DNA of 64,000 nucleotides from the NCBI RefSeq assembly GCF_964204645.1, contig NC_134036.1, forward strand, positions 1,364,001 through 1,428,000, in the 5' to 3' direction. Positions 15,601 through 18,600 of this stretch are shown one piece after another. The notes beneath the pieces were generated by a model that was not told where the DNA came from, did not search any database, and worked only from the letters and a program-made list of their open reading frames with translations. The translations under genes were made by a program, and so were the position numbers. The number at the start of each line of letters is the position of its first letter. Position 1 is the first letter of the stretch. The stretch comes from Tubulanus polymorphus. Lineage: Eukaryota > Animalia > Nemertea.

Positions 15601-18600
15601 TGATACGCAAGATGATGAGGATCATCATTACGACATATCTTCTAAAGGCGCTACTATGATTTGTGACCTTTTGGGAGAGACCTTGATGAAGACCTCTGAT
15701 GAGTGGAAGAATATGAATGAAGAATTTCAGGTAGAATTGTAGGGAGGTTGGGATTGCTCGTCAGTAAGGTTTACATTTTGGATCTATTTTGTCTTTAGAG
15801 TGTTCTCAAGTTGAGACGAGGATTGAGCGACTGCGCTGAGAAAGTGGAGAATCTTGCAAAAAATAGGTTTCCAGACATATTGGCCTGTAAGTATTGCCTG
15901 GTCATTATATAGGTACCAACAATCATTGTGACACAAGCTTTTACACATTAACAGGAGTTAAAAGAATCTATCAATCTTTTTGTCATTTAAATGAACTGCT
16001 TTGTGATATATCTGTAATAGTTATGCTATAAAAGCCTATGCTCTGTGAATTCAGCACCACTACCATAAAAAGCGCTGGTGAACATTATTATTAGTGAAAC
16101 AGGCGTTATTGTGTAGATGTGACATTATCATTATTATTAGTTTATGTCATTCCATAGAGTTAAAGTAGTGTTGTTTTTTCTAGATGATTTGACTAGAGTT
16201 GTTTTGGAACAAACCAGTGAAGATCAAACATCAGATTACGTCAATGCCAATTACATTCGGGTGATAAATCAATCCTTCTGTCCTTGAAAAGTTTGTCACG
16301 TGCTTGTAATGTTGTAGTAGTTGATATGGATATTTCATTTTTAGGGATTAACTGGTCATGTAATATGCATTGCTTGCCAGGGTAAGTCTTGTTAACATTC
16401 CAATAATCTGTTCCGATGTTATTTTGGCGCTCATGTTAATTGGTATTTCATCTAACTTGCTCTTTCAGCTCCATTGCCATCTACAATCAATGACCATTGG
16501 CGGATGATTTGGCAAGAGAAATGTCCAGCTATTATTGTACTCACTGATCTGACTGAAGGACATGGCAAAGATAAGAAGGTGGCAAAAAACGTTTTCGAAA
16601 AAGGCTTTCAGATTCTGCTGATTAAACATGGAGAATTAGGAAAAATGCGTCTTTTCATATTCCAATTGCAGGTGAAGTGTCATTTATATTGGCCAACAAA
16701 ACTGGATGCAATAGGTCGATATGGAGATATAACAGTGACAGTTGCAGAGAAAATGGAAAAACACACTGAGCCTCCGGCAGTGGTTCATTTCCTATCGATT
16801 ACAAAGGTAATGATCATACTCTTGTTTTACCAGTGGTGTTATCTGTAATTGCAAACGACTTCATACCGGTAGACCCTTCATACGTGTAGACATCGATATG
16901 ACACCATTTTATGATGAGGTTTTGTTTCGATGTTACCTTGTCACAAGTATTATAAACGGTTTCTCTCGATGAGTAACGTTTCATTTATTTCATAGCGTGG
17001 CCTCAAACAAGCACATAATCTAATAGTGTTTCACTATCGAGGATGGCCGGATCATGGTGTACCGTTCCCGGCTTCATCTGTTGTTCGTATGCAACAGTTC
17101 ATCAAACAGCGTCTTACCGACCCGGATCAGGGACTTGTGCTGATTCATGGCAGGTAAATTCAATTCAAAATCTTCCAGTCCTTTACCGTTAAGGACAAGT
17201 TTAGAAATGTTATTGTTTGTGTTGTGTTCTCAGTGCTGGTGCTGGAAGGACAGGTTGTTATATCGCAACGGAGCAGCTTCTTGAAAAAGCTAAGAAAGAT
17301 GGACTCGTTAACGTATTCGACATGACTAGGAAATTACGACAACAAAGACCAGAAATGATCCAGAATATGGTAAAATCTTAATAAATTTACTGCCTCTCAT
17401 TTCACGTTTCCAAAATGGATAACTACAACGTGTTCCTTATTACTATCTACTTCAGAAACAGTACATTCTCGTGCACCAGATTCTACTGGAGGAACTGGTA
17501 CTGGGACCGGTGGCGTACCCGACCACGAGTTTCAGAGAATCATACGAGGAAAGAAAGGCAATGCGTCCTGTATCTAGAAACGTGTCTGATAAAATAGAGG
17601 AACAATTTCTTGTACGTATTAAGATCGGCCAAAATGAGATGAAGGGTTTTGGATAACAAACAGATGGCAGCAATGAATCCATTGACCCAGATAAACTAGA
17701 TTTCAATTTTTTTTTCCTTGGTTTGGTTTTGAAGAAAATAATTACCCAATGCGTTGTTTTCTGATGCAGGTTTTGAAGGCATCAACTCCGATTCAGGACG
17801 AGGAATCACTAGCAGTGGCCAAACTACTCAACAATGTTAGCAAGTCTCGATACAAAGACATCCTTCCCGAGGCACAGTATCAACCGCAACTCTCACATAA
17901 AGGGTTCATCAATGCTTCATTTGTGCACGTGAGTTTGATTCTGAATTAATAGCTATCCGTGGAATATCTGGTAGAGGGGGGGGGGGCATTAGGCCTCGAT
18001 AATCTTCAGTTGAGATATCGATAAGTTATAAGAATCTGATTGAAATACTTTCCTTTTTACAGACGATCACAGATAAAAACGTGTTTATAGCAACACAAAG
18101 TCCAATGGCAAATACTTTTACTGACTTCTGGCAAATGATCTTTGACTATAACTGTGAAATTATTGTAATGATGCATCAAGAATATCCACAAGATCCGGTA
18201 AGGTGTATTCCTAGTCTAGCATCTAGTATACATAGGTCTGCTTTGTAGGTATCTTTTTCCAGAATACATCTTATAATTTTAGACATATGCAAGCTACTGG
18301 CCTGCAGCTGGAAGCATCAAATGCAGTCCTTTTACAATCACTGTAGAGGAAGTTTCATTGCCCTGTAAGACCATCGTTCGCCGGGATTTGATCCTCCAAA
18401 AACAGAATGTATGTTGAGTTGTTTCGGTAGCTACTGTTCAGAGAAATATGGCTGCATTTTTCGGAATTTCCTTCGACATTGCTATTTACTATGACCTGAT
18501 CAGATCAATTGTATTTCTTTGATTTCACAGGAATCGCATCAGATTCGTCAGATCCAGTTTTTAGGATGGCCTGAGGATGAGTCGGTTCCTGATTTACAAC

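What the first reader, a model, noticed from the sequence alone, without database searches (positions are those of the whole stretch)
17146..17255. D1 catalytic cysteine replaced by glycine in every complete copy (STYX-like substrate trap)
The spliced P-loop reads (I/V)[10 protein letters not shown] instead of HCSAGxGRTG. The GGC codon is at 17149, 28723, 42108 and 55514. The WPDHGVP general-acid loop, P-loop Arg, Q-loop (MIQNMKQY) and an aromatic KNRF loop are retained, and the reading frame stays open. Known: D1 is normally the active domain of tandem RPTPs, and Cys->Gly is the substitution found in the pseudophosphatase STYX. Inference: D1 is a maintained phosphotyrosine-binding or decoy module, fixed before the array expanded.
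Basis: partly seen in the sequence, partly recalled or inferred. Interest (0 to 1): 0.85.

Follow-up and report, generated by a model that had tools for sequence, protein, structure and literature searches.

The report
Cysteine-less receptor tyrosine phosphatase gene array
A ribbon worm carries at least 17 copies (four complete in this window) of a lectin-headed cell-surface tyrosine-phosphatase receptor whose main catalytic domain has glycine where the essential cysteine should be. The domain is still spliced, intact and under purifying selection, so it most likely acts as a non-enzymatic binding or signalling module.

Summary
GGC sits at the catalytic-cysteine position at 17149, 28723, 42108 and 55514. 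Spliced contigs of one RNA-like public run cross the 80-nt intron at 17153|17234, giving (I/V)[10 protein letters not shown], and RefSeq models of Tubulanus polymorphus (nemertean) join the exons the same way.

The window holds four complete receptor PTP genes of a 13.4-kb tandem array: discoidin-type lectin, EGF, FN3, TM, D1, D2. The domain is the membrane-proximal D1.

Genome-wide, 17 copies carry Gly. They form one clade beside Cys-bearing paralogues ([10 protein letters not shown]), so one Cys->Gly change preceded the expansion. The only close copy with TGC lies inside that clade and is a decayed remnant.

D1 is not decaying:
- Exon lengths and splice sites are kept.
- dN/dS is about 0.28, the same as the Cys paralogues (0.27).
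- WPD Asp, P-loop AGAGRTG, both Q-loop Gln and the KNRF Phe are invariant in 15 copies.
- The AlphaFold model is a confident PTP fold.

D2 is a degenerate D2 (WPE, HCMDSTTRAG), so the receptor is probably fully non-catalytic, like human PTPRU. Phosphotyrosine binding or substrate trapping is inferred, not shown. No orthologue outside this species was found.

The scan had already noted this family on other DNA of this genome (s1-487578, s1-487502).

The parts
17149..17151 (+). GGC (Gly) at the catalytic-cysteine position of D1, copy 1
   Evidence: Aligned to the Cys of PTPRE/PTPRA D1.
16996..17153 (+). Copy 1 D1 exon f: WPDHGVP loop up to ..LIHG + AG of the split Ser codon
   Evidence: The X4 joint ends here.
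17154..17233 (+). 80-nt GT..AG intron that splits the P-loop
   Evidence: Spliced out in two X4 contigs.
17234..17369 (+). Copy 1 D1 exon g: (S)[13 protein letters not shown]...RPEMIQNM (P-loop to first Q-loop Gln)
   Evidence: Joint 17369|17456.
15799..16806 (+). Copy 1 D1 exons a-e (15799-15886 KNRF, 16184-16260 DYVNANYIR, 16345-16381, 16469-16578, 16672-16806 KCHLYWP)
   Evidence: X4 joints 15730|15799 and 16578|16672, and the loose end at 16468.
17456..17611 (+). Copy 1 exon h: KQY (second Q-loop Gln), end of D1 and D1-D2 linker
17770..19029 (+). Copy 1 D2 exons (KSRY, WPEDES, VVHC|MDSTTRAG, FIPNL|EQY) to stop codon TAG
   Evidence: X4 joints 17611|17770, 18408|18531 and 18877|18955.
14301..14446 (+). 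Copy 1 transmembrane exon (..[25 protein letters not shown]..)
   Evidence: X4 joint 14446|15325.
27409..30583 (+). Copy 2 cytoplasmic exon chain. D1f 28570-28727 (GGC 28723-28725), D1g 28802-28937.
40794..43976 (+). Copy 3 cytoplasmic exon chain. D1f 41955-42112 (GGC 42108-42110), D1g 42193-42328.
54200..57407 (+). Copy 4 cytoplasmic exon chain. D1f 55361-55518 (GGC 55514-55516), D1g 55593-55728.
23780..26861 (+). Copy 2 ectodomain coding blocks (discoidin/F5-8C-like lectin, Cys-rich EGF-like, FN3 repeats, stalk)

Best explanation
The window holds four complete members, and the start of a fifth, of a Tubulanus polymorphus family of single-pass receptors. Each has a discoidin-type lectin, EGF and FN3 ectodomain, a TM segment and tandem PTP domains. 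One T->G change (TGC->GGC) removed the nucleophilic cysteine of the membrane-proximal domain D1 in the ancestor of the family. The gene then multiplied to at least 17 copies. Without the thiol, D1 cannot form the cysteinyl-phosphate intermediate, so it is catalytically dead (inference from the established PTP mechanism). D2 has the usual features of an inactive D2: WPE, no first Q-loop Gln, and a P-loop without glycines. The whole receptor is therefore probably non-catalytic. D1 is nevertheless kept by selection with the rest of the phosphotyrosine pocket intact. The most likely role is a non-hydrolysing binding or scaffold module. It would hold or shield phosphotyrosine proteins, or compete with the Cys-bearing paralogues for them, downstream of a fast-evolving lectin ectodomain. 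Shown: the sequence, the splice, the copy number, the single origin, the purifying selection and the fold. Inferred: loss of activity, phosphotyrosine binding and the competition model.
For: - Gly codon in all four window copies and 17 genomic copies.
- Splice 17153|17234 in RNA-like contigs and in RefSeq models.
- D1 follows the TM exon and D2 follows D1.
- Tree: the Gly copies plus one decayed TGC copy form one 100/100 clade, and the outgroup paralogues L019-21 keep [10 protein letters not shown].
- 15 of 17 copies keep all exon lengths and AG/GT sites without stops in the 3.1-kb loci examined.
- dN/dS for D1 is 0.28 (105 pairs). It is 0.41 on 7 independent pairs, with binomial P=2e-8 against neutrality.
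- The value equals that of the Cys clade (0.27) and of D2 (0.28).
- Signature positions are variable at 4 of 30, against 82 of 256 overall (P=0.013). The WPD Asp, AGAGRTG, both Gln and the KNRF Phe are invariant.
- AlphaFold2 gives pLDDT 91.3 and pTM 0.90. The nearest solved folds are PTPRT/K/M D1, TM 0.86.
- D2 in the same proteins has lost the equivalent motifs, so the fold does not need them.
- Precedents: PTPRU binds PTPRK substrates without activity (PMC7320164), and STYX has Gly for Cys (PMC8269279).
Against: - No biochemical data exist. Binding of phosphotyrosine by a Cys->Gly classical PTP domain is assumed.
- dN/dS of 0.28 is only moderate constraint, and it would also be expected if D1 were kept merely as a structural partner of D2 or for dimerisation.
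- The 'TQGP' motif is degenerate (ACQAP).
- KNRY is KNRF, and one copy has KNSF.
- D2 keeps Cys and Arg (CX5R), so some activity there is not excluded.
- Expression is shown by contigs of one run from one study, for sister copies rather than copy 1.
- No orthologue from another species was available to test long-term retention.
Confidence: 0.7

Rival explanations
1. D1 is dead and does not bind phosphotyrosine. It is kept only as a structural element, for example a spacer, a dimerisation or wedge surface, or a docking platform for D2. Selection acts on the fold, not on the pocket.
For: Overall dN/dS (0.28) equals that of the degenerate D2. In RPTPK, substrate recruitment can go through the D2 pseudophosphatase domain (title and abstract of PMC9640194).
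Against: Pocket residues (WPD Asp, P-loop, both Gln) are invariant in 15 copies although 32% of D1 positions vary. D2 shows that the fold survives without them.
Confidence: 0.15
2. The receptor is still a phosphatase. Catalysis has moved to D2 (HCMDSTTRAG keeps CX5R) or uses another nucleophile in D1, such as the Cys after GRTG.
For: D2 keeps Cys and Arg in every copy. The Gly clade has GRTGC where the Cys paralogues have GRTGS.
Against: D2 has WPE instead of WPD, Pro for the first Q-loop Gln, KSRY, and no P-loop glycine. GRTGC also occurs next to a normal catalytic Cys in PTPRS D1, so it is not a relocated nucleophile.
Confidence: 0.08
3. The array is a set of young pseudogenes decaying neutrally after loss of the catalytic cysteine.
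For: Two of 17 copies are truncated (L008, L011), and the relative L016 has stops.
Against: There are 15 intact copies with conserved splice sites. dN/dS is significantly below 1. Spliced RNA-like contigs are present. Constraint is not relaxed relative to the Cys paralogues.
Confidence: 0.03
4. Artefact: a sequencing, assembly or splice-model error, or RNA editing that restores Cys.
For: None found.
Against: The same codon is found in 17 loci on 3 contigs. Contigs of four runs cover the place without a listed alternative letter. The observed joint is the predicted one. G->U editing is not a known animal editing type (general knowledge).
Confidence: 0.01

Closest known systems
Human PTPRU (R2B receptor PTP with two pseudophosphatase domains; Hay et al. 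2020, PMC7320164)
   Same: It is a tandem-domain receptor in which D1 as well as D2 lacks activity. It sits beside active paralogues of the same architecture, and the proposed role is to bind the paralogues' substrates without dephosphorylating them. The nearest solved folds to the D1 model are R2B D1 domains (PTPRT, PTPRK, PTPRM). A Fn3_PTPRU domain is present.
   Different: PTPRU keeps the catalytic Cys and is inactive through rearranged loops, whereas here the Cys itself is Gly and the other motifs are canonical. The ectodomain has no MAM or Ig domain; it has discoidin-type lectin and EGF-like modules. This family has 17 tandem and dispersed copies, while PTPRU is a single gene.
STYX (DUSP-family pseudophosphatase)
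   Same: It has a natural Gly in place of the nucleophilic Cys in an otherwise intact HCX5R signature. STYX regains activity on Gly->Cys and acts by binding and competing (PMC8269279).
   Different: STYX is a small soluble dual-specificity-type domain. D1 here is a classical pTyr-specific PTP domain (PF00102) within a receptor. It is not a homologue at the family level.
PTPRN/PTPRN2 (IA-2, phogrin)
   Same: They are receptor-type PTPs without phosphatase activity that are conserved and functional (abstract of PMC11802530).
   Different: They have a single PTP domain and keep the Cys; two other residues are changed. They are dense-core-vesicle proteins and are not expanded.
Cys-bearing paralogues in the same genome (P0003, P0016; loci L019-L021, C12 0.28-0.31 Mb)
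   Same: They have the same architecture and the same intron positions. D1 is 77% identical, D2 carries the same HCMDSTTR(T)G, and dN/dS is the same.
   Different: They keep [10 protein letters not shown]. The P-loop exon is the most diverged exon between the two groups (31% of residues).

Membership tests
Classical receptor-type PTP (tandem PF00102 domains) | Two Y_phosphatase (PF00102) domains after a transmembrane segment | tested here: met
   Pfam scan of family proteins P0026 and P0019: PF00102 E=6e-120, 2 stretches. The window exons give TM, D1 and D2 in that order. The exons match RPTP alpha, epsilon, mu and U in the PDB.
Classical receptor-type PTP (tandem PF00102 domains) | Catalytic signature HCX5R(S/T) in D1 | tested here: not met
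   D1 reads (I/V)[10 protein letters not shown]. Gly aligns with the Cys of PTPRE and PTPRA D1. It is a member by descent and fold, but not a catalytically competent member.
Classical receptor-type PTP (tandem PF00102 domains) | WPD loop Asp, Q-loop Gln residues, pTyr-recognition loop KNRY | tested here: met
   WPDHGVP, IQNM|KQY and KNRF (Phe for Tyr) are present and invariant for the key residues in 15 copies.
Pseudophosphatase (functional class) | Phosphatase fold kept, essential catalytic residue missing, gene kept by selection | tested here: met
   AF2 pLDDT 91.3 and TM 0.86 to PTPRT D1. Gly stands for Cys. dN/dS is 0.28, P=2e-8 against neutrality.
Pseudophosphatase (functional class) | No catalytic activity; binds phosphorylated partners | not testable with these tools
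   This needs enzyme assays and pull-downs.
STYX family (DUSP-type) | Dual-specificity phosphatase domain homologous to STYX | tested here: not met
   D1 matches PF00102 end to end. In the Gly-type proteins the DSPc-type models hit only the D2 P-loop region. The resemblance to STYX is limited to the Cys->Gly change.
R2B receptor PTPs (PTPRK/M/T/U), as the RefSeq names 'kappa-like/T-like/U-like' suggest | MAM domain + Ig + FN3 ectodomain | tested here: not met
   The Pfam scan finds F5/8 type C-like lectin, FN3, Fn3_PTPRU and PTP_tm, but no MAM and no Ig.

The most novel reading that the evidence does not exclude
The family is a diversifying, lectin-headed recognition receptor system, possibly for self/non-self or glycan sensing. 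Its conserved output module would be a phosphotyrosine 'reader' built from a dead PTP domain. The Gly-type receptors would capture or shield pTyr proteins, in antagonism with the few Cys-type paralogues. That would be a natural, expanded counterpart of the PTPRU/PTPRK pair, used here with variable ectodomains.
Probability: 0.2. Interest if true: 0.8.

Novelty: new variant of a known kind. Interest (0 to 1): 0.55.

Why it matters
Receptor PTPs are normally read as enzymes whose D1 does the work. Human PTPRU showed that a receptor can be fully non-catalytic. This family makes the same point with the cleanest possible lesion: the nucleophile alone is removed and everything else is kept. The lesion was followed by expansion to 17 selected copies beside active-type paralogues in the same genome. 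That offers a natural experiment for non-catalytic PTP signalling, with a Gly/Cys swap, binding partners and competition with paralogues all open to test. It also shows that 'RPTP kappa-like' annotations can hide pseudoenzymes. The kind itself (pseudophosphatase) is well known, and function here remains inferred.

Tried and rejected
1. D1/D2 mislabelling. The P-loop exon scores higher against D2 than D1 of PTPRE/A/S, which raised this possibility. It is rejected: the domain directly follows the TM and juxtamembrane exons and is followed by a second PTP domain and the stop codon.

2. An alternative splice giving HCS. No GT donor after CAT gives an in-frame P-loop, and the observed joint is the predicted one.

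3. A relocated nucleophile (Cys in GRTGC). PTPRS D1 has the same Cys next to a normal catalytic Cys.

4. Import of the P-loop exon from another paralogue. No closer donor exists in the genome; the next best are the Cys paralogues at 68-69%. The NG86 dS of 1.37 for this exon between clades is not confirmed at four-fold sites (36-47% against about 20%; Fisher P 0.05-0.35). I treat 'older mosaic block' as weak.

5. L016 as the pre-mutation ancestor. It nests inside the Gly clade at 100/100 and carries stops, so a back-mutation in a decayed copy is the simpler reading.

6. Orthologues in other species. Two word-index searches and one exhaustive HMMER search found nothing closer than about 40-43% identity outside T. 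polymorphus.

7. The window's own proteins. They were not among the returned cluster members. P0019, whose D1 exon peptides equal those of window copy 3, served as proxy.

8. Joined spliced model. I built no joined protein from the window's exons. All searches of window sequence were exon by exon and by reference, dN/dS counts were summed over exons, and the joined step was left out.

Full report
**1. What is in the window**

The window is AT-rich eukaryotic DNA (GC about 35%). It carries a head-to-tail array with a period of about 13.4 kb, and the units are 95-97% identical. It lies at C12:1364001-1428000 of a 268-Mb genome. The database names of the family proteins identify the organism as the palaeonemertean Tubulanus polymorphus.

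Stop-free segments and motif scans give the layout of each unit on the + strand:
- ectodomain exons: a Cys-rich EGF-like part, a split discoidin/F5-8 type C-like lectin domain, and FN3 repeats
- a transmembrane exon
- a juxtamembrane region
- a first PTP domain
- a second PTP domain, ending in a stop codon

Pfam scans of family proteins agree. They find PF00102 twice, fn3, Fn3_PTPRU, PTP_tm, F5_F8_type_C_2 and F5_F8_type_C, and no MAM or Ig.

**2. The observation**

At 17146-17255 the DNA reads CAT GGC AG|gt...ag|T GCT GGT GCT GGA AGG ACA GGT. Spliced, that is [10 protein letters not shown]. The same arrangement is found with GGC at 28723, 42108 and 55514.

I built the cytoplasmic gene model of copy 1 exon by exon. 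Sixteen exons, all with AG/GT borders, give one open frame from the juxtamembrane region to TAG at 19027-19029. The same chain is open in copies 2-4.

D1 shows KNRF, DY(V/I)NANYIR, IACQAP (a degenerate TQGP), HWRMIW, IIVLT, K(C/Y)HLYWP, WPDHGVP, (I/V)[10 protein letters not shown] and IQNM|KQY. D2 shows KSRY, WPEDES, VVHC|MDSTTRAG and FIPNL|EQY. That is a typical degenerate D2 which still has CX5R.

**3. Transcript evidence**

Four public runs of one study hold 22-49% of the words of 15800-19000. I laid them on 14200-19400.
- X1-X3 carry intron sequence and behave as DNA.
- X4 alone shows GT..AG joints at the predicted borders: 14446|15325, 15479|15555, 15730|15799, 16578|16672, 17153|17234 (two contigs), 17369|17456, 17611|17770, 18408|18531 and 18877|18955.
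- X4 loose ends fit the remaining junctions: 16468, 18197 and 18742.

The P-loop splice is therefore real. No alternative letter at 17149 is listed.

One caveat applies. X4 contigs have TT at 17325-6 (Phe, as in copies 2 and 4) and no depth over the copy-1-specific exons at 16114-16461. The expressed molecules are near-identical sister copies, and expression of copy 1 itself is not shown.

Independently, RefSeq models of the family read (I/V/L)[10 protein letters not shown]. Every D1 exon peptide of window copy 3 occurs in order in XP_074661424.1 (P0019), with Ser between HG and AGAGRTG.

**4. Extent and origin**

Exon-wise protein and DNA searches of the whole genome find 17 loci with GGC:
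- eleven in the + array at C12 1.326-1.467 Mb, four of them in this window
- three in a - array at 1.078-1.111 Mb
- singles at C12:2.51 Mb, C7:6.51 Mb and C9:4.32 Mb

Cys-bearing relatives also exist:
- L019-L021 at C12 0.28-0.31 Mb ([10 protein letters not shown]; proteins P0003 and P0016)
- the more distant L022-L024
- one close copy, L016, on C10

A maximum-likelihood tree of the 3.1-kb genomic loci puts all Gly copies plus L016 in one 100/100 clade, with L019-21 as outgroup. L016 sits inside a 100/100 subclade. L016 has stop codons in two exons and two broken acceptors.

The simplest history is one Cys->Gly change before the expansion, then a GGC->TGC back-mutation in a decaying dispersed copy.

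Outside this species the best matches are about 43% identical or less in D1. The change therefore cannot be dated by orthologues.

**5. Is D1 maintained?**

Integrity. In the loci examined, 15 of 17 Gly copies keep every exon length and splice site without stops. L008 and L011 are truncated.

Selection. I summed Nei-Gojobori counts over exons, without joining them.
- D1 gives a median dN/dS of 0.28 over 105 pairs.
- On seven phylogenetically independent pairs it gives 0.41, with 106 non-synonymous and 73 synonymous differences. The binomial P against neutrality is 2e-8.
- D2 gives 0.28-0.31.
- The three Cys-type paralogues give 0.27 for the same D1 exons. Constraint was therefore not relaxed by loss of the Cys.

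Signature residues. Across 15 intact copies 82 of 256 D1 positions vary, but only 4 of 30 signature positions do (hypergeometric P=0.013). The KNRF Phe, the WPD Asp, AGAGRTG and both Q-loop Gln are invariant. D2 in the same proteins has lost these motifs, so the fold alone does not demand them.

Fold. An AlphaFold2 model of P0019:790-1062 has pLDDT 91.3 and pTM 0.90. This D1 is exon-for-exon identical to window copy 3. Its nearest solved structures are D1 of PTPRT, PTPRK and PTPRM (TM 0.86, rmsd 1.7-1.8 Å for PTPRT and PTPRM, 3.1 Å for PTPRK, 38-39% identity).

**6. Mechanism**

From the established PTP mechanism, a D1 without the thiolate cannot form the phospho-enzyme. With a degenerate D2, the receptor is most likely fully non-catalytic.

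The retained pocket argues for a binding, shielding or competing role toward phosphotyrosine proteins. Two precedents fit. PTPRU binds PTPRK substrates without activity (PMC7320164). STYX has Gly for Cys and regains activity on Gly->Cys (PMC8269279).

Cys-type paralogues of identical architecture sit on the same chromosome, which makes a PTPRU/PTPRK-like antagonism plausible. This step is inference.

The ectodomain exons of copies 2-4 evolve faster (dN/dS 0.58-0.77) than the cytoplasmic exons (0.27-0.38). The conserved tail therefore sits under a changing lectin head.

**7. Rivals**

- Structural-only retention of D1 cannot be excluded (0.15).
- Activity in D2 or through another nucleophile is unlikely (0.08). 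The Cys in GRTGC also occurs in active PTPRS D1.
- Neutral decay is contradicted by the data above.
- Artefact is likewise contradicted by the data above.

**8. Known or new**

Pseudophosphatases are a known class. Searches of the held literature returned PTPRU, PTPRN/N2, STYX and the D2 domains. They returned no tandem receptor PTP whose D1 naturally lacks the Cys, and nothing on this nemertean family.

RefSeq annotates the genes only as 'RPTP kappa-like/T-like/U-like'.

Earlier notes of this scan (s1-487578, s1-487502) reached the same reading on the minus-strand array of this genome. I re-derived copy number, selection and transcription independently.

I file this as a new variant of a known kind.

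**9. Procedure notes**

All searches of window sequence were exon by exon and by reference, and the joined-model step was left out. Whole-domain analyses used database proteins.

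Noticed in passing
L016 = G000:C10:9378700-9379072 (- strand): This is the only close family copy with TGC (Cys) at the catalytic position. It nests inside the Gly clade (100/100) and has stops in two exons and two broken acceptors. It looks like a back-mutation in a decaying dispersed copy. RefSeq still models a 353-aa 'PTP U-like isoform X2' (P0001) from it.
   Followed up: partly
L022 / L023 (G000:C12 about 9.249 Mb and 10.629 Mb); L024 (C12 about 4.023 Mb): A more distant branch of the same receptor family (P0029) has D1 P-loop HCSSGCGWTG, with the invariant P-loop Arg replaced by Trp. 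Its sister locus L024 keeps SAGCGRTG. This is a second, independent route to a probably dead D1 in the same genome.
   Followed up: partly
window 23780-26861, 37100-40400, 50500-53800 (ectodomain exons of copies 2-4): Ectodomain coding blocks evolve faster than the cytoplasmic exons: dN/dS 0.58-0.77 against 0.27-0.38. One FN3 block (25415-25726) has pN/pS 1.1-3.7 on small counts. Diversifying or relaxed selection on the lectin/FN3 head is possible.
   Followed up: partly
window 17234-17369 versus L019-L021: The P-loop exon, together with the last dozen codons of the WPD exon, is the most diverged exon between the Gly-type and Cys-type groups (31% of residues, NG86 dS 1.37). Neighbouring exons are 82-96% identical in DNA. 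Four-fold sites support this only weakly (P 0.05-0.35). It may be a patchwork of gene conversion between the two groups.
   Followed up: partly
window 6846-9455 and 10519-13102: Copy 1 has an internal direct duplication (94.7% identity, offset 3673) that doubles part of its ectodomain.
   Followed up: no
window 14548-15243: This stretch of the intron between the TM exon and the juxtamembrane exon of copy 1 has very high word depth in all four runs (up to 4e5), with many rearranged joints and loose ends. It looks like a high-copy repeat or mobile element inserted there. The homologous intron of the other copies is much shorter.
   Followed up: no
window 28316-28318 and 55107-55109 (K-Y-HLYWP): Copies 2 and 4, and three further copies in the array, have Tyr for the conserved Cys of the KCxxYWP motif of D1.
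   Followed up: no
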